The position numbers were made by a program, and so were the translations under genes. From Asterias rubens (Eukaryota), in contig NC_047071.1 in NCBI RefSeq assembly GCF_902459465.1, forward strand, positions 8,556,001 through 8,620,000: a stretch of 64,000 nt of DNA, written 5' to 3'. Of the stretch, positions 23,322 through 53,087 are shown in pieces. Each line of letters begins with the position of its first letter. Positions within the stretch are counted from its first letter, which is position 1. The notes beneath the pieces were generated by a model, which worked only from the letters and a program-made list of their open reading frames with translations, had not been told where the DNA came from and did no database searches.

Positions 23322-24437
23322 TTAATTCTTTCCCAATGAAAGCAAGAATTTCAGTAAATCTGAAGGCTCCTGTATCTCAGAGTAACGACACGTAACGATC
23401 TGCCGCATTACCACTTTGAACTGTGGGTGGTTGACTGCGTAGATGATGGGGTTTACACAGCTATTAAAAATAGCAACGGTACCTGCGTATACGGCAAACT
23501 TGCGACTGGATGGTATAGCGAGAGAGATAAAATAAGGAGACAGTAACAATGTGAAGATGCAAAACACAAGGAAGAGGTTCTTGGTGATAGCTAGTTGCTG
23601 ACGGCTGATGACCTGCCTGGCTTTCTTGGCGACGTGCTCAGCATTAGTCACTGACGACTCCCCAGTGGCAACAGTAAAACCGGTGGACGTTTCACCATCC
23701 AAACCAACCGCTGTAGAGATTGACTGACTGTTCTTGACAGATCTGCTCTTTTTCTGTTTCCTGAAGTGTCGTTTGAGATGGATGTAGAGTTCCGTGTAGC
23801 AACAGATGATGATGAGCATTGGGACTGGGTATAGACCCAAAGACTGAATCAGGTTGTATTCAGAGCCTCTAAGATGACCATCTTTGTCTGAACATGTGTT
23901 GTCTTGTGGATCGTACCCAAACGCACCAATGCCCAGAATCGGCGGGAGGAAAGTCACAACACACGGGATAACCCAAGTCATTGCGATCATGACGGCTACT
24001 CTACGAGGGGTGTACCAACAGCTGTAAGTGTTCGTGGTTTGAGTGATGAGGACCATACGGTTCAAAGCTATGGAGGCCAAAGTATAAAGACTCGCACCAA
24101 GACCGGTGTAAAACTGCACTGCAGCGATCTGGCAAGGAACTTCGGACTCCAACGGCCAGCCATCGTGGCTCAGTGCGGCGACACAAATCCACGGGTAGGA
24201 GAGACTTGTCCAGAAATCAGCCACGCTGAGATTGACCACGAAGGCGTTGGTCACGGTGCGGAGTTTCTTGGACAGGATGACGGACCAGATGACGAGACTG
24301 TTTCCAACGAGGCCCAGGATGGAGACCAAGATCCACACGCAGGCTAAAGCAATGCGAATATTGTATGAGTAAGGCGACGAAGGTGTCCCCATAGTATCGT
24401 TGATTTGGGGCAGAGAGATTTCCCCCATGTTGTTCAT
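23322..24437 (-). CDS. Intronless class A GPCR, cluster gene 4 (371 aa)
   Basis: Full ORF with all cluster 7TM motifs. Confidence 0.94.
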   Translation of the reverse strand: MNNMGEISLPQINDTMGTPSSPYSYNIRIALACVWILVSILGLVGNSLVIWSVILSKKLRTVTNAFVVNLSVADFWTSLSYPWICVAALSHDGWPLESEVPCQIAAVQFYTGLGASLYTLASIALNRMVLITQTTNTYSCWYTPRRVAVMIAMTWVIPCVVTFLPPILGIGAFGYDPQDNTCSDKDGHLRGSEYNLIQSLGLYPVPMLIIICCYTELYIHLKRHFRKQKKSRSVKNSQSISTAVGLDGETSTGFTVATGESSVTNAEHVAKKARQVISRQQLAITKNLFLVFCIFTLLLSPYFISLAIPSSRKFAVYAGTVAIFNSCVNPIIYAVNHPQFKVVMRQIVTCRYSEIQEPSDLLKFLLSLGKN

Positions 24438-32557: not shown

Positions 32558-32926
32558 TTAAAGCCATTATACACTTTCGGAACAGAACAACAAAAGTTCA
32601 GAGATTAACAACTAACCTACAGGGTTTACAGAAGGTAATGATAAAAGACTTCTCTTGATATATTATTCCATGAAATGCTTTACTTTAATGCTAAACATTA
32701 AAACAATATCAATTCTCGTTAGCGAGAATTACGGATTTATAGTAAACACATGTCATGACACGGCGAAACGTGCGGAAACAAGGGTGGGGTTTCCCGTTAT
32801 TTTCTCCCGACTCCGATGACCGATTGAGCCTAAATTTTCACAGGTTGTTATTTTATATATAAGTTGTGATACAAGAAGTGTGGGCCTTGGACAATACTGT
32901 TTACCGAAAGTGTCCACTGGCTTTAA
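32558..32926. mobile_element. MITE family B copy, reverse orientation
   Basis: TIRs and TTAA present; duplicated at 40321-40678. Confidence 0.85.
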
Positions 32927-33821
32927 GGGCAAGGATAATATCCTGCGGGCAGTCTTCTTCACACAAATCTGGTATCGGTGTATTTGCCAACGGATCACAT
33001 GGGCAGAAATCATTGTCTGGCCGTACATATCTATCATAAGAGGGGATGTATCAGGGATGACAGTAACTTGTTATTTTCTAGGTTTCTAACCCGAAAATTT
33101 ACAGGAGTTGTCTGTTCTACAAGTAAACTGCTCACAAAAATTTAGGACACCTTTTTTTAATTAAGTATATCTTTATTATTTATTAGTCTCCTCGTTTATG
33201 TTATACTACAAACGCAAAGCTGAATTGTTCCTCTTTAAAATGATAGCACATTTGCAATGATTACATGCTGCTGAATTTGGCTAAATGAATGACAATGAGG
33301 CAAGGTAATTGTTTGATCGATTCAAAATATTAAAAATAATAATAATGATAGTGCTATATTTTCTATTGTGTAGATTTGTTGGCAGGAATTAATGTTGATC
33401 CTCCCTTTCTTAGTTGCTTCGGCAAAGTAAAGTAAAGTATACGGGACAAAAAGACGGGCAAGTGGACGATGTCACAAAGCACTCAGATTCGTCTTAACTT
33501 AAGATGATTTGCTTGCCTCAGTGATTTGTATTGTGACTCTAATTGCGCCCCCCCCCCCACTTACCCCCCCCCCCCTGTCACCCCATTACACCATGCTACA
33601 TTTGCAGAATTAATTTCTAGTGTGTGCCGCACTTCTAGTGTATGATGAGCGCGAGCCGAAGTTGCATAGCTAACCAGGTTCTGGTGCCGCACGTGATTCG
33701 TGCTGCACGACTTCAACGTTGTTTTCGTTGGCACGTTTTCGTAAATCATCAGCCGCGCTTTCATACCTTGCTTTCATCCTCTTTCAAAAATAGGACGTTA
33801 AATAAATCAAATTTGAAATAA

Positions 33822-33900
33822 TTTTTGAGGTTGAACAAAGAATTGACTAGAGTGGGATTCTTTGTCAATTCTAGTCAATTCTTTGTTCAACCCCAAAAAA
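33822..33900. repeat. Short hairpin ttgaacaaagaattgactaga ... tctagtcaattctttgttcaa (duplicated at about 42415-42495)
   Basis: Inverted arms visible directly. Confidence 0.75.
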
Positions 33901-35402
33901 TCATTTCAAAATTTACCCAGTCAGTTTCCCTTGCGGTTTATATCAATATTGAAATACGAAGAAAACAAAAAAAATCGAACCCCCCTGGCCTAGTATGATC
34001 ACCGGACCGAAAAAATGACATAAGAAAAATTTGCAGCCCGATCTAAACAGGCACCTGGGAGTTTTACTCACCCAAACAGACACGTTACTTGCAAAAGTAT
34101 TAGATTGAATATTATCTGGGTTGAAAAGTTCAAAAGGTGATTTTAGTCTCAGTGCAAGTTTTGCTCTGATCAATCTTTGGAACCCGTTAAAAAAAAATAT
34201 TTTAATTTTAATCAACATCCAACGGCGCAAGCGCCAATTACACATGGGCGACGTCATGTCCTCACCGCTTGTGATTAAAGCAATGTATATTAGATTCCAG
34301 CATTTCATTAACATTTTAGCGACAGTGCCAAATATATGTAGTTTGTGTCTGACATGCAAGAAAATAAATATCAAATTTGATTAACTTTTCATTATTTTGA
34401 TTTCAAATTAAATAAGCACATGAAGAAAAAAAAACCGTAGCAACAATCCAATGTGTTCACGGGATGCTAATTGGTAAAAATGAAAGTATGTCAGCATTTA
34501 GTTCCCGTGACCTCCACTCGTCCAGTGTGTACAGTGTGTACAGCTGTAGAGATGTCTCTTCGGACGGCATAAAACTACCCCAATAGGATTGAAGCATGTT
34601 GTGATTATGCAGTCCTATTATGTACAGATATGAACAGATATGAAAAATTTGTGGAAAAATACTTCTTTCTCGAAAACTATGTCACTTCAGAGGGAGCCGT
34701 TTCTCACAATGTTTTATACCATCAACCTCTCCCCATTACTCATTACCAAGTAAAGTTTTATGCTAATAATTATTTTGAGTAATTACCAATAGTGTCCACT
34801 GCCTATAAAGGACTTGGGTGCTTTTTCAAAATGTCCATGAATTTACATTAAACAGGGTTTGAAGGTAATGATAGTGGAAAGTTTCCCTTCAAATATTACT
34901 TACTGGGGTGCAGTAGTTTTTGAGAATTAGTAAAACAATGTCATGAAAATACAATTGTATTATCCTTAAAATAATTTTCGTCTCATGAGACGAAAATTAT
35001 TTTCGTTTTACTCATTTCCCCAAAACTACAGCACCTCAGCACGTAATATTTTCAGGGAAGCTTTCTACTGTCATTATCTTCAAACTGTGTCAGTTTAGTG
35101 TAAAACTGTGGCACTGTGTTTTTTCTCCTACAAAAAGTATACACCCTTTCAAAGGGCAAGGTCACTAAGGCATTTAAATCTGAGGTCTCGAAATCAAATT
35201 CGTGGAAAATTGCTTCTTTCTCGATAACGATGGCACTTCAGAGGGAGCCGTTTCTCACAATGTTTTATACCATCAACCTCTCCACATTACTCTTCACCAA
35301 GAAAGGTTTTATGCAAATAATTATTTTGAGTAATTACCAATAGTGCCCATGCACTGCCTTTAAGAGAAACAACAACAACAACAAACACTTGATGAAAGGC
35401 TC

Positions 35403-35790
35403 TTAAAGGTAGTAGACACTATTGGTAATTGTCAAAGACTAGCCTTCACAGTTGGTGTATCTCCACATATGCATACAATAACTAACCTGTGAAAATTTGA
35501 GCTCAATCGGTCATCGAAGTTGCGAGATAATAATGACAGAAAAAACGCCCTTGTCACACGAAGTTGTGTGCGTTTTAAGATGGTTGATTTCGAGACCTTA
35601 AGTTCTAAATCTGAGGTCTCGAAATCAAATTCGTGGAAAATTACTTCTTTCTCGATAACGATGGCACTTCAGAGGGAGCCGTTTCTCACAATGTTTTATA
35701 CCATCAACCTCTCCCCATTGCTCATCACCAAGAAAGGTTTTATGCTAATAATTATTTTGAGTAATAGCCAATAGTGTCCACTGCCTTTAA
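35403..35790. mobile_element. MITE family A copy, reverse orientation
   Basis: TIRs and TTAA present; duplicated at 46552-46940. Confidence 0.87.
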
Positions 35791-36318
35791 TCTTGTGCCA
35801 ATTCTCTTGCCTGTTATAAGGGTGATGGTATTGATGCTGTTTCAAAAATGAAGATGGTAGTGCTGCTTTTGGTGATAGTGTTAGTTCTGTCTCGATGTTG
35901 ATGCTGGTGTCGGTGCTGTGTTGATGATAAACGTAGAGTGGCGTTGATGATGTTGAAGGTGGTGTTGGTGTTCGTGCGGTGTCTATTGATCATGTTTTTG
36001 TCGGTGCTTGGTCGATGATCAATGTTGTAGTGCTGCTGCTGATGCTGATGATGATGGTGGGAGTGGTGCTGGTTTTGGCGGTGTGTCGATGATGATGGTG
36101 CTGGTGTCGGTGCTGTGTCGATGAAAAAGGTGATAGTCGTTGCTGCTGCTGATGGTGAAGGTGGTGTTGTTGTTGATGCTGCGGAGCTGATGTCGATGAT
36201 GATGATGCTGGTGTAATGATGTGTCGATGATGTCGTCCTGTTGCTGCTGTTGATTATAATGATGGTGATGGTGTCGATGTCGTTGGAACTAGTTAACAGA
36301 ATCCCGGCATGGAATTTG

Positions 36319-37689
36319 TTAATTCTTTCGCAATGACAGCAAGAGTTTCAGTAAATCTGAAGGTTCTTGTATTTCAGAGTAACGGCACTTAACTATCTTC
36401 CGCATAACCACTTTGAACTGTGGGTGATTGACTGCGTATATGATGGGGTTTACACAACTGTTAAAAACAGTTATAGTGACTCCGTAGAGAGCAAACTTAC
36501 GACTGGATGGTATAGCGAGAGAGATAAAGTAAGGAGACAGTAACGATGCGAAGATGCAAAACACAAGGAAGAGGTTCTTGGTGATGGCTAGTTGCTGGCG
36601 GCTGATTGCTTGACGGTGTCTCACGCTGGAGTCTTGTAAGGTGCTCACTGAGTTGATGGAACTAGCTGTACTGACGCGGTTGGGGACATGAGATTGGCAA
36701 CGCGTAGTTGTATCGACACTGAGCGTCTGCGAAAGCTCCCTAGCAGCGCTATGTTTCGCACTGTCGTTAACGGGGGTTTTAGCTTGAGTGTCATCAAGAA
36801 ATGTAATTTCGGATAAGTCTTCATAAACTGCATTGGATCTGCTGGATGTTTCCCCAACCGATGGTTCAACAGTTGACGGGATATATGTGCTGAGGTCTCC
36901 GCTGACGTTGGTTTCTCCAGAAGAAGCCACAATGGCAACCGAAAAGCTGACAGAAGTTTCTGCGATGGTTTGTCTTGATCTTATATTCTGCATGTTGTCC
37001 TTCTTCTTCATCTTCCTGAAGTGTTGTTTGAGATGGATGTAGAGTGCCGTGTAGCAACAGATGATGATGAGCATTGGGACCGGGTATAGACCCACAGATT
37101 GTGCCAGGTTGTATTCGGGACCTCTTGGGTGACCATCTTTATCTGAACATGTATTGTCTTGTGGATCGTAACCAAATACGCCTATGCCCAGAATCGGTGG
37201 GAGGAAAAACACAATACACGGACAAACCCAAGTCATTGCGATCATGACGGCTACTTTACGCGGGGTGTACCACCAACTGTAGGTGTTCATTGTTTGAGTG
37301 ACGAGGACCATACGGTTCAAAGCTATGGAGGCCAACGAGTAGAGACTTGCACCGAGACCGGTATAAAGTTGAATGGCAGCAATTACACAAGGGACCTCCG
37401 ATTCCAAGGGCCAGCTTTCATTACTCACCAAAGCTACGCAAATCCACGGGTAGGAGAGACTGGTCCAGAAATCAGCCACGCTGAGGTTGACCACGAAGGC
37501 GTTGGTCACGGTGCGGAGTTTCTTGGATAGGATGACGGACCAGATGACGAGACTGTTACCTACGAGGCCCAGAATGCAGGTCAAAATCCAAACACCGACC
37601 AAGGCTGCACGAGCTTCGTATGGATACAGCGAAGAATAGACTGGTGCCTTCGTTGTATCATTGATCTTGGGCAGAGAGTTGTTGTCCAT
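36319..37689 (-). CDS. Intronless class A GPCR, cluster gene 6, long-ICL3 form (456 aa from the likely ATG at 37689; ORF extends to 37800)
   Basis: 7TM motifs as in the paralogs. N- and C-terminal parts are near-identical to gene 7, and the Ser/Thr-rich ICL3 is near-identical to gene 8. Confidence 0.93.
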   Translation of the reverse strand: MDNNSLPKINDTTKAPVYSSLYPYEARAALVGVWILTCILGLVGNSLVIWSVILSKKLRTVTNAFVVNLSVADFWTSLSYPWICVALVSNESWPLESEVPCVIAAIQLYTGLGASLYSLASIALNRMVLVTQTMNTYSWWYTPRKVAVMIAMTWVCPCIVFFLPPILGIGVFGYDPQDNTCSDKDGHPRGPEYNLAQSVGLYPVPMLIIICCYTALYIHLKQHFRKMKKKDNMQNIRSRQTIAETSVSFSVAIVASSGETNVSGDLSTYIPSTVEPSVGETSSRSNAVYEDLSEITFLDDTQAKTPVNDSAKHSAARELSQTLSVDTTTRCQSHVPNRVSTASSINSVSTLQDSSVRHRQAISRQQLAITKNLFLVFCIFASLLSPYFISLAIPSSRKFALYGVTITVFNSCVNPIIYAVNHPQFKVVMRKIVKCRYSEIQEPSDLLKLLLSLRKN

Positions 37690-38217
37690 CTTGTTCAATC
37701 GACAGCACAATACATCTAGTACCGATACCAGTTGTGACAGCTTATATAAGGTCATTCGGCAAGAGATTTTGTTATACGTCCGTGTTACAACTATTGACAA
37801 ACTTTGCTGAAACGCAAGGGAAATTTTTCATATTATTGTTTTAAATTATCGAACAAACCTAATCCCTGTTAAAATAGATGACAAACTTAACTGAAATCCA
37901 AGTGCAAATTATATGAATAGGGTTGTCAAAATATTGAACGAGGAAACACACGGGAAACCGGCTGAATCATTATAACCTTTCCCGCTGCAATAGCACATAT
38001 AGTTCCATAGTTCATAAATTGACGACCGTTGACCAATAGGTGACCAATGTTGTCCGGCCAATACAAAACTGAACATATAGTTAGGCTGCAATCGGCTTAC
38101 AAATGTGGGAGATAAAGCGTTTTGTAAATATTCATAAAATGACCACTGCTGACCAACAAAAGACCATTGGTAACATGATTCCTAAATAGATAAGGTACAT
38201 TAACAATAAAACAAAGT

Positions 38218-38510
38218 CTATAGACGGTGTGATCTATGTTTACATTTAAACCGCCCTCTGTTGACAAAACACTATATACGTCATGTTTCGCCGGGCAAAG
38301 AGTTGCGTAGACTGGGCCCCTGTCTTTATCCGCAAGGATAAACGAGCCTCGAAGAATGACGTCAGACGTTCAGGCTAAGAGTTGCGTAGTCATAGTAAGA
38401 TTGCGTACACTTTCTAGCTGGCTGCCAAAACACAAAGGTTTTGCCCGGCGGTATGCGCGCGAATCATGTTATGGTTTTCGTGTGACGTCAGAGGTCACAT
38501 CGTCTATAGA
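38218..38510. mobile_element. MITE with TIR tctatagacg(g/a)tgtga
   Basis: Inverted termini visible; a related end fragment lies near 27177. Confidence 0.68.
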
Positions 38511-38661
38511 CATTGAAACCAAAAAATAACATGACCGTACCTGCTGGCCGATAGGATGACGGTCAGTAGTGGTCATTTCATTACTATTTACACCATGAGT
38601 CTTCTCCCACAGGCTTGAGCCATTTGCAGGCTAACGTGATCCAATGTCCCATTGGCTCGAA

Positions 38662-38814
38662 CAATGGAAGACTTTGGGACGCTAGGTGGCAGCAGACTTA
38701 CCAGGTAAATTTCCATTGTTTACGTAGTTCTGAGCGTGCGCACATGACCGAGAACAATGGATTTTACCTGGTAACTCTGCTGCCGCCACCAAGCGTCCCA
38801 AAAGTCTCCCATTG
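38662..38814. mobile_element. MITE with ~48-bp imperfect TIRs (caatgg..agactttgggacgct.ggtggcagcagacttaccaggtaaa)
   Basis: Inverted arms visible directly. Confidence 0.75.
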
Positions 38815-38901
38815 GGTTGTATACAAATTTTAATTTTGGCCAGCGGTCATCTATCGATCAGCAGTGTTTTGTTTTTGTTTTTTTGTTGTATATATGATTA
38901 T

Positions 38902-39292
38902 TTAAAGGCAGTGGACACTATTGGTATAATTACTCAAAATAATTATCAGCATAAAACCTCACTTGGTATCGAGTAATGGGGAGAGGTTGGTAGTATAAAA
39001 CATTGTGAGAAACGGGTCCCTCTTAAGTGACGTAGTTTTCGAGAAAGGAGTAATTTTTCCACGAATTTGATTTCGATACCTGAAGTTTAGAATTTGAGGT
39101 CTCGAAATCAGGCATCCGAAAGCACACACAACTTCGTGTGACAAGGATGTTTTTTCTTTCATAGCTATCTCGTAACTTCGATGACCGATGGAGCTCAAAT
39201 TTTCACAGGTTTGTTATTGTATGCATATGTTGAGATACACCAAGCGAGAAGACTGGTCTTTGACAATTACCAATAGTGTCCACTGTCTTTAA
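38902..39292. mobile_element. MITE family A copy
   Basis: TIRs and TTAA present; its distal part is duplicated at about 48878-49147. Confidence 0.87.
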
Positions 39293-39575
39293 AACAAATT
39301 GCCTATGGTCACAATAGTGGTCAGTAGAGGTGACAAACAAAGTTACAGAAATCTTCTCCGTTTGCTGGTCCTTTGAAACAAACCATACGAACGGTGTCCA
39401 CAGAGCGTGTAATATAGGTTTTCTCGGTCAATTTCAGCGCAGCTGTAGAGATGTCTCTTCGGACGGCATAAAACTACCCTTATACCATAATAATTGTTTC
39501 CTAAAATTACGTTACATGCTTTTATTTTACTATAACCAAAATTAGACAGTCTAAATGGCTTCCCAAAATAACACG

Positions 39576-39958
39576 TTAAAGGCAGTGGACACTATTGGTA
39601 ATTACTCAAAATAATTATTAGCATAAACCCTTAATTGGTAACTAGTAATAGGGAGAGGTTGATAGTATAAAATCTTGTGAGAAACGGCTCCCTCTGAAAT
39701 GATGTAGTTTTCGAGAAAGAAGTAACTTTCCACGAATTTAATTTCGAGACCTCAAGTTTAGAACTTGAGGTCTCGAAATCAAGCATCTGAAAGTACACAA
39801 CTTCGTGTGACAAGGGAGTTTTTTCTTTTATAGTTATCTCGTAACTCCGACGACCAATCGAGCTAAAGTTTTCACAGGTTTGTTATTTTATGTACATGTT
39901 GAGATACACCAAGTGAGAAGACTGGATTTTGACAATTACCAATGTTCACTGCCTTTAA
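39576..39958. mobile_element. MITE family A copy
   Basis: TIRs and TTAA present. Confidence 0.87.
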
Positions 39959-40320
39959 AACATTTTACATCGATACCACGTTAAATCCTTATACTAAATA
40001 TTTTACATCAACATCAAGTACATCGTGTTTAAACAAAATGTAATAGGTAAAAGTGGTTCATACTCAAAGTTTAACCCGAAATCTTAACAGGATTTTTGAT
40101 AAGGTACTCTCTGGCTTCTGCATTCAAATTTACTTGTGGTTCCCATGTACTTTTTGATTTAGGGAAACCTTTCCATCTGATCAAGTACTCTAATCGTTTT
40201 TTCCTGTATCTTCATCTGACTATAGGTTCAATTTCATACTCTCTGGGTTTCTTTTGAACCTTGGGTAGCCCTGGAACAATAACAATTCCTGATTCATCTT
40301 GAATTGAATCTCGCTTTGAT

Positions 40321-40678
40321 TTAAAGCCATTATACACTTTCGGAACAGAACCAACAAAAAGTTCAGAGATTAACAACTAACTTACAGGGTTTACAGAAGG
40401 TAATGGTAAAAGACTTCTCTTGAAATATTATTCCATGAAATGCTTTACTTTAATGCTAAACATTAAAACAATTATAAATTCTCGTTAGCGAGAATTACGG
40501 ATTTATAGTAAACACATGTCATGACACGGCGAAACGTGTGGAAACAAGGGTGGGTTTTCCCGTTATTTTCCCGATTGTGCCTAAATTTTCACAGGTTTGT
40601 TATTTTGTATATAAGTTGTGATACACGAACTGTGGGCCTTGGACAATACTGTTTACTGAAAGTGTCCACTGGCTTTAA
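40321..40678. mobile_element. MITE family B copy in the duplicated block
   Basis: Same flanks as 32558-32926. Confidence 0.85.
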
Positions 40679-41160
40679 GGGCAAGGATAACATCCTGCGG
40701 GCAGTCTTCTTCACACAAATCTGGTATTGGTGTATTTGCCAACGGATCACATGGGCAGAAATCATTGTCTGGCCGTACATATCTATCGTAAGAGGGGATG
40801 TATCAGGGATGACAGTAACTTGTTATTTTCTAGGTTTCTCACCCGAAAATTTACAGGAGTTGTCTGTTCTACAAGTAAACTGCTCACAAAAAGTCAGGAC
40901 ACTCTTTTTTAATCAAGTGAATCTTTTTTATTTATTAGTCTCCTTGTATGTTCTTATCAACGCAAAGCTGAATTGATCCTCTTTAAAATGATACCACATT
41001 TGCAATGATTACATGCTGCTGAATTTGGCTAAATGAATGACAATGAGGCAAGGTAATTGTTTGATCGATTCAAAAAATGAAAAATAATAATAACGGAAAT
41101 GCTGTATTTTCTATTGTGTAGATTTGTTGGCATGAATTAATGTTGATCCTCTCTTTCTTA

Positions 41161-42010
41161 TGCTACTCTCACACTTGGGCGAATATCTTGCGAATACGAA
41201 TGTTTGAAATTCGCGATGAATTCGCCCAAAAGTTGCGATTTTATGTTCTCTGTCGTCCTTAACCTCTCCTTACCAATATCTTACGCATAATACGCACGCT
41301 TTACCAACAGTACCAATGGCTTACCAAATGCTTACGCAAATCGATGGCGAATTACCGTCTTCACCACAATCGCTGAATGTACTGAAGCGCTTCGTATTGC
41401 TGCTCTCACAGAATGGCGAATGTTCTTGTGAACATGAATATTTGAACTGCGCGTATAATTCGTCCAACATGGCGGTTGGATAGTGAATATTTTCATCTCG
41501 GTTTCGCCCTTGATCGTCCTCGGTCGGCCCTCTCCTTACCAATATCTTATGAATATATTACGAATGCTTACCAACGCTTGCCAATGCCTTTACGAACGTT
41601 GCAATCGCTCACGCACGCTTTACCAACATTACCAATGCTTACGAAAATCACGCCGAATGACCGTCTTTGCAACATCACTGAAATTAACAAACCGGTTTGT
41701 AAATTGAGCGATCTTCGTAAGGAGGTTGGAAATAATTTGTGAACGTTCCGAATTTGTTACCAACGCTTACGAAGACACGGCGAATGCTGCGAAGTTTGAG
41801 CAATTGTCAAATTATGTCCTTCCGATAGCATATTCGCTAGCATACTCGCCGTGTGAGAGTAGCATAAAGTGACCGATCTTCGTAAGGAGGTGGAGAATGA
41901 CTTGTGAACGTAGTGAATTTGTGGCGAATGTGGCGAAGTTTAAGCGACTGTTAAATATTTCCGTTCGTACGCACGTTCGCTAGCATATTCTCCCTAGTGT
42001 GAGAGTAGCG
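41161..42010. mobile_element. PIF/Harbinger-like non-autonomous element (850 bp) with TTA TSD
   Basis: TIR gctactctcacac ... gtgtgagagtagc; tta at 41158-41160 and 42011-42013; the empty site (ctttcttagttgctt) survives near 33410. A 3-bp TWA TSD is the established Harbinger signature. Confidence 0.88.
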
Positions 42011-43314
42011 TTAGTTGCTTCGTAAAGTATACGGGACAAAAAGACGGGCAAGTGTACGATGTCACAAGGCACTCAGATTCGTCTTAACTTAAGATGATTT
42101 GCTTGCCTCAGTGATTTGTATTGTGACTCTAATTGCGCCCCTCCACGCCCCCCCCCCCCTGTCACCCACCCCTTACACCACGCTACATTTGCAGAATTAA
42201 TTTCTAGTGTGTGCCGCACTTCTAGTGTATGATGAGCGCGAGCCTAAGTTGAATAGCTAACCAGGTTCTGGTGCCGCACGTGATTCGTGCTGCACGACGT
42301 CAACGTTGTTTTCGTTGGCACGTTTTCGTAAATCATCAGCCGCACTTTCATACCTTGCATTCGTTCATCCTCTTTCAAAAATAGGACGTAAAATCAATCC
42401 AATTTTGAAAAAAAAATTGGGGTTGAACAAAGAATTGACTAGAGTGGGATTCTTTGTCAATTCTAGTCAATTCTTTGTTCAACCCCAAAAAATCATTTCA
42501 AAATTTACCCAGTCAGTTTCCCTTGCGGTTTATATCAATTTTGAAATACGAAGAAAACAAAAAAAAATTCGACCCCCCCCCCCCTAGTATGGTCACCGGA
42601 CCGAAAAAATGACATAAGAAAATTTGCAGCCCGCTCTATACAAGCACCTGGGAGTTTTACTGACACAAACAGACACGTTACTTGCATAAGTATTAGATTG
42701 AATATTATCTGGTTTGAAAAGTTCAAAAGGTGGTTTTAGTCTCAATGCAAGTTTTGCTCTGATCAATCTTTGGAACCCGTTAAAAAAAAATTATTTTAAT
42801 TTTATTTTAATCAACATCCAACGGCGCAAGCGCCAATTACACATGGGCGACGTCATGTCCTCACCGCTTGTGATTAAAGCAATGTATATCAGATTCCAGC
42901 ATTTCATTTATATTTTAGCGACAGTGCCAAATATATGTAGTTTGTGTAATGCGAGAAAATAAATATCAAATTTGATTAACTTTTCATTATTTTGATTTCA
43001 AATTAAATAAGCACATGAAGAAAAAAAACCTTAGCAACAATCCAATGTGTTCACGGGATGCTAATTGGTAAAAATGAAAGTATGTCAACAAATTTGCATT
43101 TAACATAGGCCTACTAGGTTGAAAACTTCCCACAATGTATTTTCGCATGGCATGCTATAGTTGTGGAGAAATAATTTAGAAAGAAAAGAAAAAAAACGCT
43201 GAAGGCCATTGTTGACCGGCATGGAAAAAAGGAACAAATACTAGGAAGATTTACAAATACATCTCGTGTTTATTACAAAAATATATACAAAATTGTGCCA
43301 AGACAATTTGTGTT

Positions 43315-43678
43315 ACAAGCCATTGGAACCTTTCGGTTCAGAAAAAAAAATTAAGTTCACAGATTTACAAATAACTTACAGGGTTTAAAGAAGGCAATGG
43401 TGAAAGACTTCTCTTGAAATATTATTCCATGAAATGCTTTACTTTTTGAGAAAACAGCAAAACAGTATAAATTCTCGTTAACGAGAATTACGGATTTATT
43501 TTTAACACATGTCATGACACGGCGAAACGCGCGGATGGGGTTTTCCGTTGTTTTCTCCCAACTCCGATGACCGATTGAGCCTAAATTTTCACAGGTTTGT
43601 TATTTGATATAGAAGTTGTGGTACACAAAGTGTGGGCCTTGGACAACACTGTTTACCGAAAGGGTCCAATGGCTTTAA
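43315..43678. mobile_element. MITE family B copy
   Basis: aagccattggaacctttcgg ... gggtccaatggctttaa. Confidence 0.82.
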
Positions 43679-43934
43679 GTTGGCAAAACAACTATAGACC
43701 CTACAAGTCATCAACAAGTACAATATCGACATAAATTACACTCTGACTCCGACTGGGAAACTCGATCGAAAAGGAAAGTTCTCAATATAATACGAGTCCC
43801 CTTTGGCCCAAAGGCATGACTCGATGCCAAACCTATAATTTAGCGTTTCATTTTCAAATCTATTTATGACCAAAAGGGACAAGCGTCAACTTTAAACACA
43901 CTTTTGCTAATTAAATCTTTTAATAATAATAAAT

Positions 43935-44195
43935 TATAATAGTGGCTTCTTATAATAGCGCGTCTGAATGCCTCGACTACTATGCTGCCAAATATGTTGC
44001 GCACTAAGCTAATCAATCACAAGAACCATCTCTGCCCTCACAGGTACCCATTTACCCCTGGGTGGAGAGAAGCTTATGGTTAAGTGTCTTGCTCAAGGAC
44101 ACAAGTGTCACGACCGGGATTCGAATCCCCACTCTGCTGATCAGAAACACCAGAGCTTGAGTTCGATGCTCTTATTCGCTCGGTCACGACACCCC
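43935..44195 (-). mobile_element. tRNA-derived SINE
   Basis: Minus strand reads ggggtgtcgtgaccgagcg (A-box-like), attcgaatcccggtcgtgacacttgtgtccttgagcaagacacttaacc (B-box-like plus body), then ctctccacccaggggtaaatgggtacc. Confidence 0.8.
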
Positions 44196-46200
44196 AAGAT
44201 TAGTGTTTTCAGATAAGGCCAATAAAAAAAAAAAACATGTTTCGCGTCCCCGCCCGCTTCCTTTTTTTTTTTTTTTTTTTCATTATCAATAACCCACTTA
44301 TTGGGCGATGATTTTATTAATGATTTAACCTTTTTCGGTGTTATCCAACAAATGGTGAATATATTTAACCCTTTGATTTACAGTTTCTGTTGAGATACGT
44401 CATACAACCAGGCATAGAAAATATATTTTCCACGATGGCAAACGGTAGTGAGATGTGACCTTGGCATCTCTCTCAAAATCGAGAGGGTGCTCAGTGATTT
44501 GTAGATGCTATAGAAGGTTGGTTATTAACTAAATACAGTCGTGACAGTTGCAGCGCAATCACACGCATACATGCCACAACCGGCGTTGCACATAATGGCA
44601 TGATAAAACTGAAACTAAAAACTGAAACTAATTCAACAGTAGTGTCACTCTGTTGCTCCCTCTGCAACTGTCACGACTATGTACGACTGAATAGAAAACA
44701 CAACTTCATATTTAGTTAAAAACTAACCTTCAAATTTGATCTATATCTACTGGAAAACCCCGCTCGTCAGAGCCACTCCGCCACTCGCCATGTTGGAAAA
44801 TATCGTTATGTCTTTTTTTTTATACCTTGCTCAACTTTTGGGCAACTCTTTGATCGTAGTGCGCATGATCGGATGATTTTGACCAACTAATGTGCATCAC
44901 TTTTACCAACAATCGAATTAAATTAATATTACCAAAAAAGTTGCCCAATAAATAAGCAAAAGTGTAACCAACAGTTATGATAAATTCAGATTACGAATTA
45001 TTTGCCCAACACTTGCCCAACTTTTGTTCCACTTTAAAAAAACAAAATTGGCAAACAAAATGTTTGCCCAACAACACCAATTATTGGTTTTGTTGGGCAA
45101 TTATCGACCAATAATTGTTGAAGTTACTTTGCCCAACAAATGATTTGACCAACGTTTTTGCAGTGAACTACATACAATGTAAAGGTATACAGTCGACTAA
45201 CTATATATACCCTTTTTTAAAGGTAGTGGACACTAATGGTAATTGTCGAAGACTAGCCTTCACAGTTAGTATATCTCAACAAATGCATAAAATATCTAAC
45301 CTGTGAAAAATTTGAGCTCAATCGGTCATCGAAGTTGCGAGATAATAATGAAAGAAAAAAATAAATCTGAGGTCTCGAAATCAAATTCGTGGAAAATTGC
45401 TTCTTTCTCGAAAACGATGACACTTCAGAGGGAGCCGTTTCTCACAATGTTTTATACCATCAACCTCTCCCCATTGCTCATCACCAAGTGAGGTTTTATG
45501 CTAATACTTATTTTGAGCTCAAATTAGTTATTTTGTGCGCCGGAAATAATTTATTGTGGTCGAAATCGTTTCGAGTAAAACCATTTATTTCGTGAGATCA
45601 AATCAAAACTTAAAAATGATTTCAAGTGCAGGATATGAGGACTTCAAATTATTTATGTGTTTCCTATTTTCTATTAGTTCAGTTTTTCATCATTATGTCC
45701 CTTTATGGGCTCCATACGTAACAGTTTATTATATCAGTTTAAACTCATCCAATTGTTGTTTTCCCCATAATATGCACTAAAACAGACAACTTGTCAACAC
45801 TGATATACAATGTAATGTACATAACAGTCATGCCACTTTTCAACAGCTGTTTTTCTTCAATGATAATGCAATAATTAAAGGAAACCGACAAAACACTGTA
45901 CAAAGTTAAGCGAGGTTGGCCATTTCCTCATTTGTTTTGCATGTACCGAGTTGCATGTGTGACATAGGTCAAGGTATACGCCAAAAGACAAATAAATTCA
46001 CTTTTGCCAAATAATTGTTCAGTAATTTTGCTGTGATAAGACGAAATATACAACATAATGTTACATACCGCGCTTAATGCTATACGTTTATAAGCGGCAT
46101 AGAAAAACTTAGACCGTGGAACACAGCACAACACCAAGTTATGGTTTACAATGTGCTGTGGCGCAATTTGTAGCCTAGCCTTGGTATATGTCCAAGGCTC

Positions 46201-46555
46201 TTAAAGCCATTGGACCCTTTCGGTACAGAACAAAAAAAAAATCACAGATTTACAAATAATTTACAGGGTTTACAGAAGGTAATGGTGAAAGCCTTCTCTT
46301 GAAATATTAGTCCATGAAATGCTTTTAATACTTTTTGAGAAAACGGTTAACGAGAATTACGGATTTATAGTAAACACATGTCATGACACGGCGAAACGTG
46401 CGAAAACAGGAGTGGGTTTTCCCGTTATTTTCTCCCGACTCCGATGTCCGATTGAGCCTAAATTTCCACAGGATTGTTATTTTATATATAAGTTGTGATA
46501 CACGAAGTGTGGGACTTGGACAATACTGTTTACCGAAAGTGTATACTGGCTTTAA
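46201..46555. mobile_element. MITE family B copy abutting a family A copy at a shared TTAA
   Basis: ttaaagccattggacc ... tactggctttaa followed directly by aggtagtggacac. Confidence 0.85.
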
Positions 46556-46940
46556 AGGTAGTGGACACTATTGGTAATTGTCGAAGACTAGCCTTCACAG
46601 TTGGTGTATCTCAACATATGCATACAATAACTAACCTGTGAAAACTTGAGCTCAATCGGTCATCGAAGTTGCGAGATAATAATGACAGAAAAAAACGCCC
46701 TTGTCACACGAAGTTGTGTGCGTTTTTAGATGGGTGATTTCGAGACCTCAAGTTCTAAATCTGAGGTCTCGAAATCAAATTCGTGGGAAATTACTTCTTT
46801 CTCGATAACGATGGCACTTCAGAGGGAGCCGTTTCTCACAATGTTTTATACCATCAACCTCTCCCCATTGCTCATCACCAAGAAAGGTTTTATGCTAATA
46901 ATTATTTTGAGTAATAACCAATAGTGTCCACTGCCTTTAA
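46552..46940. mobile_element. MITE family A copy
   Basis: TIRs and TTAA present. Confidence 0.87.
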
Positions 46941-47470
46941 TCTTGTGCCAATTCTCTTGCCTGTTATAAGGGTGATGGTATTGATGCTGTTTCAAAAATG
47001 AAGATGGTAGTGCTGCTTTTGGTGATAGTGTTAGTTCTGTCTCGATGTTGATGCTGGTGTCGGTGCTGTGTCGATGATAAACGTAGAGTGGTGTTGATGA
47101 TGTTGAAGGTGGTGTTGGTGTTCGTGCGGTGTCTATGTTGACCATGTTTTTGTCGGTGCTTGGTCGATGATCAATATTGTAGTGCTGCTGCTGCTGCTGA
47201 TGATGATGGTGGGAGTGGTGCTGGTTTTGGCGGTGTGTCGATGATGATGGTGCTGGTGTCGGTGCTGTGTCGATGAAAAAGGTGATAGTCGTTGCTGCTG
47301 CTGATGGTGAAGGTGGTGTTGGTGTTGATGCTGCGGAGCTGATGTCGATGATGATGATGCTGGTGTAATGATGTGTCGATGATGTCGTCCTGTTGCTGCT
47401 GTTGATTATAGTGATGGTGATGGTGTCGATGTCGTTGAAACTAGTTAACAGAATCCCGGCATGGAATTTG

Positions 47471-48583
47471 TTAATTCTTTCGCAATGACAGCAAGAGTTT
47501 CAGAAAATCTGAAGGTTCTTGTATTTCAGAGTAACGGCACTTAACTATCTTCCGCATTACCACTTTGAACTGTGGGTGATTGACTGCGTATATGATGGGG
47601 TTTACACAACTGTTAAAAACAGTTATAGTGACTCCGTAGAGAGCAAACTTACGACTGGATGGTATAGCGAGAGAGATAAAGTAAGGAGACAGTAACAATG
47701 CGAAGATGAAAAACACAAGGAAGAGGTTCTTGGTAATAGCTAGTTGCTGACGGCTGATGACCTGCCTGGCTTTCTTGGAGACGTGCTCAGCATTAGTCAC
47801 TGACGATTCCCCAGTGGCAACAGTGAAACTGGTGGACGTTTCACCATCCAAACCAACCACTGTGGAGATTGACTGACTATTCTTGCTAGATTTGCTCTTT
47901 TTCTGTTTCCTGAAGTGTCGTTTGAGATGGATGTAGAGTGCCGTGTAGCAACAGATGATGATGAGCATTGGGACCGGGTATAGACCCACAGATTGTGCCA
48001 GGTTGTATTCGGGACCTCTTGGGTGACCATCTTTATCTGAACATGTATTGTCTTGTGGATCGTAACCAAAAGCGCCTATGCCCAGAATCGGCGGGAGGAA
48101 AAACACAATACACGGAATAACCCAAGTCATTGCGATCATGACGGCTACTTTACGCGGGGTGTACCACCAACTGTAGGTGTTCATTGTTTGAGTGACGAGG
48201 ACCATACGGTTCAAAGCTATGGAGGCCAACGAGTAGAGACTTGCACCGAGACCGGTATAAAGTTGAATGGCAGCAATTACACAAGGGGCCTCCGATTCCA
48301 AGGGCCAGCTTTCATTACTCACCAAAGCTACGCAAATCCACGGGTAGGAGAGACTGGTCCAGAAATCAGCCACGCTGAGGTTGACCACGAAGGCGTTGGT
48401 CACGGTGCGGAGTTTCTTGGATAGGATGACGGACCACATGACGAGACTGTTACCTACGAGGCCCAGAATGCAGGTCAAAATCCAAAAACCGACCAAGGCT
48501 GCACGAGCTTCGTATGGATACAGCGAAGAATAGACTGGCGCCTCCGCTGTATCATTGATCTGGGGCAGAGAGTTGTTGTCCAT
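47471..48583 (-). CDS. Intronless class A GPCR, cluster gene 7 (370 aa from the likely ATG at 48583; ORF extends to 48694)
   Basis: 7TM motifs; segmental-duplication partner of gene 6, but with a short ICL3. Confidence 0.93.
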   Translation of the reverse strand: MDNNSLPQINDTAEAPVYSSLYPYEARAALVGFWILTCILGLVGNSLVMWSVILSKKLRTVTNAFVVNLSVADFWTSLSYPWICVALVSNESWPLESEAPCVIAAIQLYTGLGASLYSLASIALNRMVLVTQTMNTYSWWYTPRKVAVMIAMTWVIPCIVFFLPPILGIGAFGYDPQDNTCSDKDGHPRGPEYNLAQSVGLYPVPMLIIICCYTALYIHLKRHFRKQKKSKSSKNSQSISTVVGLDGETSTSFTVATGESSVTNAEHVSKKARQVISRQQLAITKNLFLVFFIFALLLSPYFISLAIPSSRKFALYGVTITVFNSCVNPIIYAVNHPQFKVVMRKIVKCRYSEIQEPSDFLKLLLSLRKN

Positions 48584-49266
48584 CTTGTTCAATCGACAGC
48601 ACAATACATCTAGTACCGATACCAGTTGTGACAGCTTATATAAGGTCATTCGGCAAGAGATTTTGTTATACGTCCGTGTTACAATTATTGACAAACTTTG
48701 CTGAAACGAAATGGAAACTTTTCACTATTGTTTTAAATTATCGAACAAGCCACATCCTTGTTAAAATAGATGACAAAGTTAGCTGAAATCCAAGTGCAAA
48801 TTATATGAATAGGGTTGTCAAAATATTGAACGAGGAAACACACGGAAAATCGGCTGAATCATTATAACCTTTCCCGCTGAAGTGACGTAGTTTTCGAGAA
48901 AGGAGTAATTTTCCACGAATTTGATTTCGAGACCTCAAGTTTAGAATTTGAGGTCTCGAAATCAGGCATCCGAAAGCACACACAACTTCGTGTGACAAGG
49001 ATTTTTTTTTCTTTCATAGCTATCTCGTAACTTCGATGACCGATGGAGCTCAAATTTTCACAGGTTTGTTATTTTATGCATATGTTGAGATACACCAAGT
49101 GAGAAGACTGGTCTTTGACAATTACTAATAGTGTCCACTGTCTCTAAAACAAATTGCCTATGGTCATAATAGTGGTCAGTAGAGGTGACAAACAAAGTTA
49201 CAGAAATCTTCTCCGTTTGCTGGTCCTTTGAAACAAACCATACGAACGGTGTCCACAGAGCGTGTA

Positions 49267-49652
49267 ATATAGGTTTTCTCGGTCAATTTCGGCAAATGAG
49301 CAGCCAATTTAACCACCAAGCTATTCTATTTCGCGCGAAATCGAATGCTACAAATCGTTTTATGATTAGTCAAATGTAATGTTGCGTCGTTCGATTTAAC
49401 AAAATAATCATTCAATTCAACAATTCATCAAAGCAGCATTCAAATTCGCAACGCTTTTTGAGGCGTGTGTGCCACGAAAAAGAATGACGATACGAGTGCT
49501 TAAGGAATTTGACTCGACTCAAATTGAAATTGAATTGCTGAATTCTGAATTTGAAACGCAGTAACAACTGGAAAGGCAAAACAGCTTTAATTCGAACCCG
49601 TGAAAATGAAATTGGCTGCTCATTTGCCGAATTTGACCGAGAAAACCTATAT
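49267..49652. mobile_element. MITE with ~45-bp TIR atataggttttctcggtcaa(t/a)ttcggcaaatgagcagccaattt
   Basis: Inverted termini; inverted copy at about 58863-59276; truncated ends at about 30457 and 39409. Confidence 0.82.
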
Positions 49653-52698: not shown

Positions 52699-53087
52699 TT
52701 AAAGCCAGTGGACACTATTGGTAACTGTCAAAGACCAGTCTTCTCACTTGCTGTATCTCAACATATGCATAAAATAGCAAACCTGTGAAAATTTGAGCTC
52801 GATTGGTAGTCGGAGTTGCGAGATAACTATGAAAAAGAAACACCCTTGTCACACGAAGTTGTGTGCGTCCAGATGCTTGATTTCGGGACCTCAAATTCTA
52901 AACTTGAGGTCTCGAAATCAAATTCGTTGAAATTTACTTCTTTCTCGAAAACTACTCCACTTCAGAGGGAGCCGTTTCTCACAAGGCCTTTTACTACCAA
53001 CCTCTCCCCATTACTCGTTAACAAAATAAAGGTTTTATGCTAATAATTATTTTGAGTAATTATACCAATAGTGTCCACTGCCTTTAA
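52699..53087. mobile_element. MITE family A copy, reverse orientation
   Basis: ttaaagccagtggacac ... gtgtccactgcctttaa. Confidence 0.87.

What the first reader, a model, noticed from the sequence alone, without database searches (positions are those of the whole stretch)
36560..37030. Swappable ICL3 cassette: gene 6 is a mosaic with a gene-7 frame and a gene-8 long intracellular loop
Genes 6 and 7 are near-identical from the upstream DNA through TM5, and again in TM7, helix 8 and the 3' flank. Between ..IHLK and TM6 gene 6 instead carries a Ser/Thr-rich loop about 86 aa longer (KMKKKDNMQN...SSVRHRQ). That loop differs from the gene 8 loop (55665-56070, opposite strand, ~19 kb away) at only four residues by my reading (S/L, Y/S, P/H, S/P). 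Elsewhere genes 6 and 8 differ substantially (N-termini, TM7, C-tail). Gene 7's short loop closely resembles gene 4's. Established: ICL3 influences G-protein coupling and GRK/arrestin phosphorylation in class A GPCRs. Inference: gene conversion primed in the conserved TM5 and TM6 flanks exchanges signalling modules independently of the ligand-binding half, creating combinatorial receptor variants.
Basis: partly seen in the sequence, partly recalled or inferred. Interest (0 to 1): 0.8.

Follow-up and report, generated by a model that had tools for sequence, protein, structure and literature searches.

The report
Gene-conversion mosaic in starfish receptor gene
One of eight neighbouring starfish (Asterias rubens) receptor genes has had its inner signalling loop overwritten by a copy from a neighbour 19 kb away, a clean but ordinary case of gene conversion between tandem paralogues.

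Summary
The window is Asterias rubens DNA with eight intronless class A GPCR paralogues.

- **The mosaic.** Gene 6 (36319-37689, minus strand) is 98.2-98.7% identical to gene 7 on both sides of a tract. Inside the tract (at most 36550-37080, at least 36586-37025) it is 98.6% identical to gene 8 (476/483) and only 67% identical to gene 7.
- **Informative sites.** They read 7…7 / 71 sites of gene-8 type with no exception / 7…7.
- **Tree tests.** AU tests reject the alternative groupings at p about 1e-47 (flanks) and 1e-52 (tract).
- **Direction.** The syntenic A. amurensis array has a single gene-6/7 orthologue with the short loop. Its gene-8 orthologue has the long loop as an open frame. So the transfer ran from gene 8 to gene 6, after the species split.
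- **Junctions.** Both lie in the identity blocks that flank the loop, in TM5 and TM6 of an AlphaFold model.
- **An older exchange.** Genes 3, 4 and 6/7 also share a young TM5-ICL3-TM6 block. Synonymous divergence there is 0.08-0.14, against 0.4-1.2 elsewhere.

This is interlocus gene conversion, a known process in tandem GPCR arrays. The functional "cassette" idea is untested. Public contigs could not bridge the junctions, and whether part of the loop is spliced out remains open.

The parts
36319..37689 (-). Gene 6 CDS (456 aa from the Met of MDNNSLPK): the mosaic recipient, an intact class A GPCR
   Evidence: ORF and translation. Pfam 7tm_1 E = 4.6e-40. It keeps all 21 family-invariant residues of alignment A1. 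The AlphaFold2 model has mean pLDDT 79.5 and pTM 0.74 with seven TM helices.
36550..37080 (-). Converted tract at its maximum extent (minimum 36586-37025). It covers the cytoplasmic half of TM5, all of ICL3 and the cytoplasmic half of TM6. It is gene-8 type and includes 258 nt absent from gene 7.
   Evidence: 476/483 identical to gene 8 against 151/225 to gene 7. 71 donor-type and 0 orthologue-type informative sites. The tract tree places gene 6 with gene 8 and am8 at 100/99 support. The AU test rejects gene 6 + gene 7 + am67 at p = 3e-52.
37026..37080 (-). 5' junction interval, codons 203-222, inside TM5. Recipient-type and donor-type sequences are identical here.
   Evidence: The last gene-7-type site is 37081 and the first gene-8-type site is 37025. 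Site 37033 is a later change in gene 8. Genes 7 and 8 share a 47-nt perfect run at 37034-37080. TM5 is helix 203-245 in the model.
36550..36585 (-). 3' junction interval, codons 368-381, inside TM6
   Evidence: The last gene-8-type site is 36586 and the first gene-7-type site is 36549. The interval lies in the 98-106 nt identity block 36585-36480 between the gene-6/7 and gene-8 lineages. TM6 is helix 349-392.
55008..56363 (+). Gene 8 CDS (451 aa from the Met of MNDSSVEP): the donor, on the opposite strand. The donor tract is about 55599-56129.
   Evidence: Its A. amurensis orthologue (L001:10001-11356) has the same long loop as an open frame.
47471..48583 (-). Gene 7 CDS (370 aa): unconverted sister copy of gene 6 with the ancestral short loop
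   Evidence: 98.2% and 98.7% identical to gene 6 in the flanks. Its loop is 96.4% identical to that of the A. amurensis orthologue am67.
32735..39435 (.). Duplication unit holding gene 6. It is colinear with the gene 7 unit and with single-copy A. amurensis DNA.
   Evidence: Colinear blastn blocks to 40501-49290 at 92-98% and to the A. amurensis region.
40501..49290 (.). Duplication unit holding gene 7
   Evidence: The intergenic blocks are 92-94% identical between the two units. The gene block is 97-98% identical.
23322..24437 (-). Gene 4 CDS. Its TM5-ICL3-TM6 block is much younger relative to gene 7 than the rest of the gene, which points to an older exchange.
   Evidence: For genes 4 and 7, dS is 0.09 in codons 201-300 against 0.48-1.12 elsewhere (Fisher p = 1e-8). 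The orthologue controls are not significant.

Best explanation
The window holds a tandem array of eight intronless rhodopsin-type GPCR genes of Asterias rubens.

**Sequence of events.**
- After the split from A. amurensis, the single gene-6/7 ancestor and roughly 6-9 kb around it were duplicated in tandem.
- Later, a break in or near the ICL3 coding part of gene 6 was repaired by non-crossover (ectopic) gene conversion. The template was gene 8, which lies about 19 kb away in inverted orientation.
- Strand invasion and resolution used the near-identical TM5 and TM6 coding stretches on either side.

**Result.** A patch of 440-531 bp was copied. It comprises the cytoplasmic half of TM5, the whole Ser/Thr-rich long ICL3 (including 258 nt absent from the recipient) and the cytoplasmic half of TM6. 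Gene 6 therefore has the ligand-facing parts of gene 7 and the G-protein/arrestin-facing loop of gene 8. The distance between the HLK.HFRK and ISRQQL motifs grew from 49 to 135 residues.

**What is shown and what is inferred.**
- Shown: the mosaic, its boundaries, its direction and its relative age.
- Inferred: the repair mechanism, and any change in coupling selectivity or phosphorylation-dependent regulation.

The array as a whole undergoes partial concerted evolution of its intracellular half. Divergent islands remain in the ligand-facing parts.
For: **Species and family.** The top database hits are Asterias rubens proteins. Pfam 7tm_1 matches.

**The mosaic.**
- Sliding identity and the informative-site string read 7…7 / 8…8 / 7…7.
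- In the tract, gene 6 is 98.6% identical to gene 8 and 67.1% to gene 7. In the flanks it is 98.2/98.7% identical to gene 7 and 84.5/79.7% to gene 8.
- Segment trees are incongruent.
- AU tests give p = 1.4e-47 for the flanks and 3e-52 for the tract.
- The triplet run is 71 to 0.
- For genes 6 and 8, dS is 0.031 in the tract and 0.51/0.75 in the flanks.

**Direction.** The A. amurensis array is syntenic. It has one short-loop gene-6/7 orthologue and a long-loop gene-8 orthologue.

**Independent divergence since the transfer.** Of the 7 tract differences, 2 are derived in gene 6 and 5 in gene 8.

**Junctions.** They lie in 47-nt and about 100-nt perfect-identity blocks. These map to TM5 (helix 203-245) and TM6 (helix 349-392). 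Residues 254-338 are disordered.

**The duplication is real rather than allelic.** The two units are colinear over several kb. Their intergenic parts are only 92-94% identical, close to the 91% seen between species.

**Weak independent support.** In run X4 a contig matches the gene-6-specific upstream variants exactly (37761-37920). Loop word depth there (60) is about twice that of the copy-specific contigs (28-39). In the A. amurensis-like run X8 the loop depth (17) is about that of the single-copy flanks (20-22).
Against: - No read or contig was shown to span a junction together with unambiguous markers on both sides. Logan contigs end in the shared 47-nt and about 100-nt stretches, with or without a mosaic.
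- The gene-6-private letters (36406, 36545, 36817, 36824, 37177-37224) were not seen in runs X2 or X4. Contigs drop minor variants, but these letters could be private to the reference or polishing errors.
- Gene 6 vs gene 7 flank divergence (1.7%) and gene 6 vs gene 8 tract divergence (1.45%) are about equal. A single event with template switching cannot be separated from two successive events.
- No expression data for gene 6 were obtained. RNA run X25 laid nothing on the gene.
Confidence: 0.85

Rival explanations
1. Assembly artefact. Either gene 6 is a chimera stitched from gene 7 and gene 8 reads, or genes 6 and 7 are two haplotypes of one locus wrongly laid in tandem. In the second case long and short loops would be alleles.
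For: The junctions could not be bridged with public contigs. The gene-6-private letters were absent from runs X2 and X4. The 1.3-1.8% divergence between genes 6 and 7 in the coding flanks is within what alleles of a broadcast spawner might show (my own knowledge).
Against: - There is no N in the window, so both copies lie in one contig.
- A chimera would need two switches within 500 bp.
- The gene 6 loop is not a copy of the assembled gene 8 loop. They differ at 7 sites, and gene 6 keeps the ancestral letter at 5 of them.
- The two units are colinear over 6-9 kb but their intergenic parts are only 92-94% identical with large indels, close to the between-species 91%. That is too divergent for alleles.
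- The X4 depth pattern fits two loop-bearing genes.
- Even under the allelic reading the loop would still have come from gene 8 by conversion.
Confidence: 0.06
2. Reverse history. Gene 6 is an old long-loop gene of gene-8 type whose two flanks were overwritten by gene 7, leaving the loop as a relic.
For: The gene block shared by genes 6 and 7 (97-98%) is younger than the intergenic part of the same duplication units (92-94%). Some homogenisation between genes 6 and 7 after the duplication is therefore likely.
Against: - A. amurensis has no gene between its gene-6/7 and gene-5 orthologues.
- The whole gene 6 unit, non-coding DNA included, is colinear with the single A. amurensis gene-6/7 unit.
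- The gene 6 loop is only 1.45% from gene 8's, less than the 3.9% between the gene-8 orthologues. So the loop itself is young in gene 6.
Confidence: 0.04
3. The extra loop DNA is not protein. Part of it is an intron (exitron) spliced from the mRNA, as NCBI's models have it. At protein level gene 6 would then differ from gene 7 much less in length.
For: NCBI's gene 6 model P0001 (372 aa) removes 252 nt (36740-36991). The A. amurensis gene-8 orthologue model P0004 (363 aa) removes 264 nt. Loop dN/dS between gene 8 and am8 is 0.72, a weak constraint.
Against: - The two modelled introns differ.
- The A. rubens one needs a GC donor.
- The acceptor CAG of the A. amurensis one reads CGC in A. rubens genes 6 and 8.
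- The frame is open through the loop in gene 6, gene 8 and am8, with no indel among them over 483 nt.
- Even the spliced models keep gene-8-type loop ends, so the mosaic would persist.
- No RNA evidence either way was obtained.
Confidence: 0.15

Closest known systems
Interlocus gene conversion in tandem chemosensory GPCR arrays, e.g. bird gamma-c odorant receptors (bioRxiv 10.1101/2025.11.14.688425, read). From my own knowledge: primate OR clusters, L/M opsins, CCR2/CCR5.
   Same: - Intronless class A GPCR paralogues in a cluster.
- Short tracts copied between neighbours.
- Genes that are mosaics of homogenised and divergent sub-regions.
- Similarity that extends to synonymous sites.
- Gene trees that differ by segment.
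   Different: - Here one discrete, datable event is resolved to junctions of about 50 bp, with an outgroup that gives donor and recipient.
- The tract carries a 258-nt length variant across about 33% sequence divergence.
- The donor is inverted and about 19 kb away.
- The outcome for the recipient pair is divergence of gene 6 from gene 7, not homogenisation.
Echinoderm lineage-specific rhodopsin-type GPCR expansions: Acanthaster planci putative olfactory receptors (ApORs) and sea-urchin surreal-GPCRs (PMC5442662)
   Same: - Tandem arrays in both orientations and single-exon genes.
[quoted passage not shown]
- Distant homologues of gene 6 (about 40% identity; P0050, P0062, P0085, P0095) lie on an A. 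planci scaffold of 4,163,896 bp. That is the length the paper gives for its ApOR scaffold 10.
   Different: - Membership in the ApOR or surreal clades was not tested by phylogeny.
- Expression in tube feet or sensory tentacles was not tested.
- The closest A. planci relatives (61-67% identity) are on another scaffold.
- The paper does not mention gene conversion (0 occurrences).
ICL3 as a length-dependent autoregulator of G-protein selectivity (Sadler et al., Nature 2023, PMC10033409)
   Same: - A long, disordered ICL3 between TM5 and TM6.
- The paper shows that grafting a long ICL3 into a short-ICL3 receptor changes coupling selectivity. It proposes a length threshold of about 45 residues.
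   Different: That work is experimental and uses vertebrate receptors. Here nature made the graft (49 to 135 residues between the conserved motifs), and no signalling data exist.
ICL3 length variants made by other routes: dopamine D2 long/short by alternative splicing, and the D4 48-bp VNTR (my own knowledge)
   Same: ICL3 length changes without any change to the ligand pocket.
   Different: The mechanism is splicing or VNTR slippage, not transfer between paralogues.

Membership tests
Class A (rhodopsin-like) GPCR | Match to the 7tm_1 profile above the gathering score | tested here: met
   PF00001 E = 4.6e-40, 138 bits against a cut-off of 30.5, for gene 6. Genes 7 and 8 are similar.
Class A (rhodopsin-like) GPCR | Seven transmembrane helices plus helix 8, with the loop in question lying between TM5 and TM6 | tested here: met
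   The AlphaFold2 model (pTM 0.74) has helices 24-54, 61-88, 99-131, 143-166, 190/203-245, 349-392 and 394-421, plus 423-433. Residues 254-338 have pLDDT below 50.
Class A (rhodopsin-like) GPCR | Canonical DRY (end of TM3) and NPxxY (TM7) motifs | tested here: inconclusive
   NPxxY is present as NPIIY. The DRY position reads NRM in seven genes and NRT in gene 1, resembling the NRY of melatonin receptors (motif identity from my own knowledge).
Interlocus (ectopic) gene conversion | Segment-wise phylogenetic incongruence with statistical support | tested here: met
   Trees. AU p = 1.4e-47 and 3e-52. The first AU run on the tract was invalid and was repeated.
Interlocus (ectopic) gene conversion | A patch bounded on both sides by recipient-type sequence, with the donor left unchanged (non-reciprocal) | tested here: met
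   Site string 7…7 / 8…8 / 7…7. Gene 8 keeps the loop that its A. amurensis orthologue also has.
Interlocus (ectopic) gene conversion | Similarity extends to synonymous sites, so it is not due to selection on the protein | tested here: met
   For genes 6 and 8, dS is 0.031 in the tract and 0.51/0.75 in the flanks.
Interlocus (ectopic) gene conversion | Junctions lie in stretches of donor-recipient identity | tested here: met
   Perfect runs of 47 nt (37034-37080) and 98-106 nt (36585-36480) coincide with the junction intervals.
Interlocus (ectopic) gene conversion | The mosaic is present on single sequenced molecules, so it is not an assembly product | tested here: inconclusive
   Only Logan contigs were available and they break at the shared stretches. 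A search for junction-spanning partial proteins found none.
Echinoderm putative chemosensory GPCR expansions (ApOR / surreal-GPCR) | Tandem array of single-exon paralogues in both orientations | tested here: met
   Eight genes in 51 kb, six on the minus strand and two on the plus strand. The A. amurensis array is syntenic.
Echinoderm putative chemosensory GPCR expansions (ApOR / surreal-GPCR) | Groups phylogenetically with named ApORs or surreal-GPCRs, and is expressed in tube feet or sensory tentacles | not tested
   Only database hit lists and the paper's description are available. There are no expression data.

The most novel reading that the evidence does not exclude
The TM5-ICL3-TM6 block is a recurrently exchanged unit in asteroid GPCR arrays. 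It moved once among genes 3, 4 and 6/7 before the A. rubens / A. amurensis split, and once from gene 8 to gene 6 afterwards. The G-protein/arrestin-facing half of these receptors therefore evolves on a different genealogy from the ligand-facing half. The long-loop and short-loop pair (genes 6 and 7) is kept by selection as two signalling outputs for one ligand specificity.
Probability: 0.15. Interest if true: 0.6.

Novelty: new member of a known kind. Interest (0 to 1): 0.4.

Why it matters
Gene conversion between tandem receptor genes is usually discussed as a homogenising force. Here it is a clean natural 'loop-swap' experiment. Genes 6 and 7 are almost identical in every ligand-facing segment, but their ICL3 differs by 86 residues of disordered sequence (30% Ser/Thr across the long loop).

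Recent work shows that ICL3 length gates G-protein selectivity (PMC10033409). That makes the pair a ready-made test of the idea in a non-vertebrate receptor family.

There is also a practical point. NCBI gene models in two species cut different, non-conserved 'introns' out of this loop, which deserves an RNA check.

The finding does not open a new category. It adds a well-resolved example, with donor, recipient, junctions and relative date, to a known process.

Tried and rejected
1. **Read laying on 35300-38200 with four runs.**
   - Only Logan contigs were served, and they end in the TM5/TM6 stretches shared by the paralogues. The junctions were neither confirmed nor refuted.
   - The RNA run X25 covered only the repeat element at 35.4-35.8 kb, so there is no expression or splicing evidence.
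   - Run X2 has very uneven depth and an unknown library type, so its depths were not used.
2. **Junction-spanning protein search.** A search with gene 6 codons 164-300, aimed at partial ORFs in other assemblies, found no hit.
3. **First AU test on the tract.** It was invalid because genes 6 and 8 were identical in the kept columns. It was repeated without gene 8 and with all columns.
5. **Origin of the 258-nt insert.**
   - blastn against the window and 94 kb of A. amurensis found only the gene 6, gene 8 and am8 copies.
   - Weak protein self-similarity to the short loop (E = 0.03-0.2) hints at old internal duplication but proves nothing.
6. **Allelic reading of genes 6 and 7.** Considered and judged unlikely after the intergenic comparison.
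7. **'ICL3 alone is a hot spot' reading.** Rejected. The low-divergence block spans gene 7 codons 201-300 (TM5 to TM6). A second block, codons 41-80, is homogenised in all paralogues. Smaller candidate tracts lie in TM3-TM4 and ECL2.
8. **Literature.** Only two papers hold both 'gene conversion' and 'third intracellular loop', and neither mentions them in title or abstract. I did not open them.
Full report
**What is in the window.** The 64-kb window has no N. It holds eight intact single-exon ORFs of one class A GPCR family:

| Gene | Coordinates | Strand |
|---|---|---|
| 1 | 5750-6976 | - |
| 2 | 9396-10535 | + |
| 3 | 16416-17540 | - |
| 4 | 23322-24437 | - |
| 5 | 28837-29928 | - |
| 6 | 36319-37689 | - |
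| 7 | 47471-48583 | - |
| 8 | 55008-56363 | + |

All match Pfam 7tm_1 at about 1e-40. The best database matches are Asterias rubens proteins. They carry automatic names such as 'moody-like' and 'melatonin receptor 1B-like'. Relatives occur in A. amurensis, Patiria, Acanthaster and other echinoderms.

**Checking the observation.**
- The protein alignment shows genes 6 and 7 nearly identical except between ...IHLK and TM6, where gene 6 is 86 residues longer.
- At DNA level, sliding identity and the informative-site string give a clean 7…7 / 8…8 / 7…7 pattern.
- In the tract 36550-37032, gene 6 is 476/483 identical to gene 8 and 151/225 to gene 7.
- In the 5' and 3' coding flanks it is 98.2% and 98.7% identical to gene 7, and 84.5% and 79.7% to gene 8.
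- A triplet test with the orthologue as reference gives a run of 71 donor-type sites with no orthologue-type site. None of 2000 shuffles reached it.
- Segment trees put gene 6 with gene 7 and am67 in TM1-5 and in TM6-C-tail. They put it with gene 8 and am8 in the tract.
- AU tests reject gene 6 + gene 8 + am8 on the flanks (p = 1.4e-47). They reject gene 6 + gene 7 + am67 on the tract (p about 3e-52).

**Direction and date.**
- I fetched 94 kb of the syntenic A. amurensis array (CP134960.1; stitched without overlap mismatches).
- It has the same gene order but only one gene of gene-6/7 type (am67, 370 aa, short loop).
- This gene lies next to the gene-8 orthologue (am8), whose long loop is an open frame of the same length. 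So the long loop is ancestral to gene 8, the short loop is ancestral to gene 6/7, and the transfer ran from gene 8 to gene 6.
- Orthologues are 96-97% identical. The tract of genes 6 and 8 is 98.6% identical and the flanks of genes 6 and 7 are 98.2-98.7%. Both the duplication and the transfer therefore post-date the species split.
- With am8 as outgroup, 2 of the 7 tract differences arose in gene 6 and 5 in gene 8. Site 37033 is also a later change in gene 8. The two loop copies have diverged independently since the transfer.

**Junctions.**
- After removing sites that are private to one gene, the 5' junction lies between 37081 and 37025 (codons 203-222).
- The 3' junction lies between 36586 and 36549 (codons 368-381). 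The tract is therefore 440-531 bp.
- These intervals coincide with perfect-identity runs between the gene-6/7 and gene-8 lineages. One is 47 nt (37034-37080). The other is 98-106 nt (36585-36480) and is among the longest in the gene.
- In an AlphaFold2 model of gene 6 (pLDDT 79.5, pTM 0.74), TM5 is helix 203-245 and TM6 is helix 349-392. Residues 254-338 are disordered.
- The patch is therefore the cytoplasmic half of TM5, all of ICL3 and the cytoplasmic half of TM6.
- Between the conserved HLK.HFRK and ISRQQL motifs, gene 6 has 135 residues (30% Ser/Thr) and gene 7 has 49.

**Is the duplication real?**
- The gene 6 and gene 7 units are colinear over several kb: 32735-39435 against 40501-49290. 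Each is also colinear with the single A. amurensis unit.
- The gene block is 97-98% identical. The intergenic blocks are only 92-94% identical with large indels, not far from the 91% between species.
- That is too divergent for two haplotypes, so a false tandem duplication is unlikely.
- It also means the gene block shared by genes 6 and 7 is younger than the duplication. This hints at further conversion between genes 6 and 7.

**Independent read evidence.**
- The single read-laying run served only Logan contigs. They break in the shared TM5/TM6 stretches whether or not a mosaic exists, so the junctions were not bridged.
- Run X4 has a contig identical to gene 6 over 37761-37920, where gene 6 differs from gene 7 at ten or more sites. 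Its loop contig has about twice the depth of the copy-specific contigs.
- Run X8 matches A. amurensis-type letters and has 16 differences in the 487-nt loop contig. There the loop depth equals the single-copy depth.
- The loop contigs of X2 and X4 carry the ancestral letter at all seven differing sites.
- The gene-6-private letters were not seen in X2 or X4.
- This is weak support at best. The organisms and library types of these runs are coded or unknown.

**The wider pattern.**
- Synonymous divergence among genes 3, 4 and 6/7, in both species, is 0.08-0.14 in gene 7 codons 201-300 (TM5-ICL3-TM6). Elsewhere it is 0.4-1.2 (Fisher p from 1e-8 to 8e-5).
- Orthologue pairs show no such dip, so it is not a mutational cold spot.
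- Codons 41-80 (TM1 end, ICL1, TM2) are nearly identical in all paralogues.
- Divergence is concentrated at the N-terminus and TM1, ECL1-TM3, ECL2 and TM7.
- Smaller candidate tracts occur in TM3-TM4 and ECL2.
- The array thus shows partial concerted evolution of its intracellular half, with divergent ligand-facing islands. This is the pattern described for bird gamma-c odorant receptors.
- The transfer from gene 8 to gene 6 is the latest and largest event of this kind. It is unusual only in carrying a length variant.

**Is the loop coding?**
- NCBI's model of gene 6 (P0001, 372 aa) removes 252 nt (36740-36991, GC..AG).
- The A. amurensis am8 model (P0004) removes a different 264 nt (GT..AG). 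Its acceptor CAG reads CGC in A. rubens.
- The frame is open in all three copies with no indel. dN/dS is 0.72, as expected for a disordered loop but not far from neutral.
- I consider the modelled introns probably artefacts of protein-guided modelling. This needs RNA data.

**Comparison with what is known.**
- Interlocus gene conversion in tandem GPCR clusters is well established (and my own knowledge of OR, opsin and CCR2/CCR5 cases).
- Echinoderm tandem arrays of rhodopsin-type GPCRs with hypervariable ICL3 are described as putative olfactory receptors (PMC5442662). Membership of this array in those clades was not tested.
- ICL3 length is an experimentally supported determinant of G-protein selectivity, with a threshold of about 45 residues (PMC10033409). 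A functional consequence is therefore plausible but untested.

**Verdict.** It is a new example of a known process rather than a new kind of system.

Noticed in passing
window 35398-35790, 38901-39293, 39576-39959, 46551-46940, 52699-53088, 59560-60283: An interspersed repeat of about 390 bp, with copies at the ends of the gene 6 and gene 7 duplication units. Contigs laid on it reach word depths in the millions in all four runs, including the A. amurensis-like one. It is therefore a very abundant SINE- or MITE-like element of Asterias, and it may have mediated the duplication.
   Followed up: partly
window 56313-57196: A 64-bp unit repeated 14 times directly behind gene 8. It repeats the gene's last codons and stop codons (TRF score 1268). 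The scan already noted it as s1-150556.
   Followed up: partly
window 437-1741; also L002:17125-19800: A GC-rich (60%) low-complexity repeat with long ORFs on both strands (PIPLDPAPWD-like periodicity). A similar block with ORFs on both strands lies in the A. amurensis intergenic DNA.
   Followed up: no
window 36740-36991 (gene 6) and L001:10001-11356 (A. amurensis gene-8 orthologue): The NCBI gene models of the two species cut different 'introns' of 252 and 264 nt out of the long ICL3. One needs a GC donor. The other uses an acceptor that is not conserved in A. rubens. The frame is open throughout in gene 6, gene 8 and am8.
   Followed up: partly
all eight genes, gene 7 codons 41-80 and 201-300: Two blocks have very low synonymous divergence among paralogues: TM1 end-ICL1-TM2 in all genes, and TM5-ICL3-TM6 in genes 3, 4 and 6/7. 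Orthologue divergence is normal in both. This indicates partial concerted evolution with divergent islands in the ligand-facing segments.
   Followed up: yes
A. amurensis CP134960.1 13216881-13218296 (am9; L001/L006) and protein P0010: Other family members have unrelated long ICL3s. These are am9 (447 aa), the next gene beyond the gene-8 orthologue, and P0010 (457 aa, another species). The P0010 loop contains repeats of the ETSTSFTVATGES-like unit. ICL3 expansion has therefore happened several times in this family.
   Followed up: partly
window 37988-39016 vs 48879; A. amurensis stitched region: Upstream of the genes, the gene 7 unit lacks about 775 bp that the gene 6 unit (38241-39017) shares with A. 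amurensis. Both units lack about 1 kb that is present in A. amurensis.
   Followed up: no
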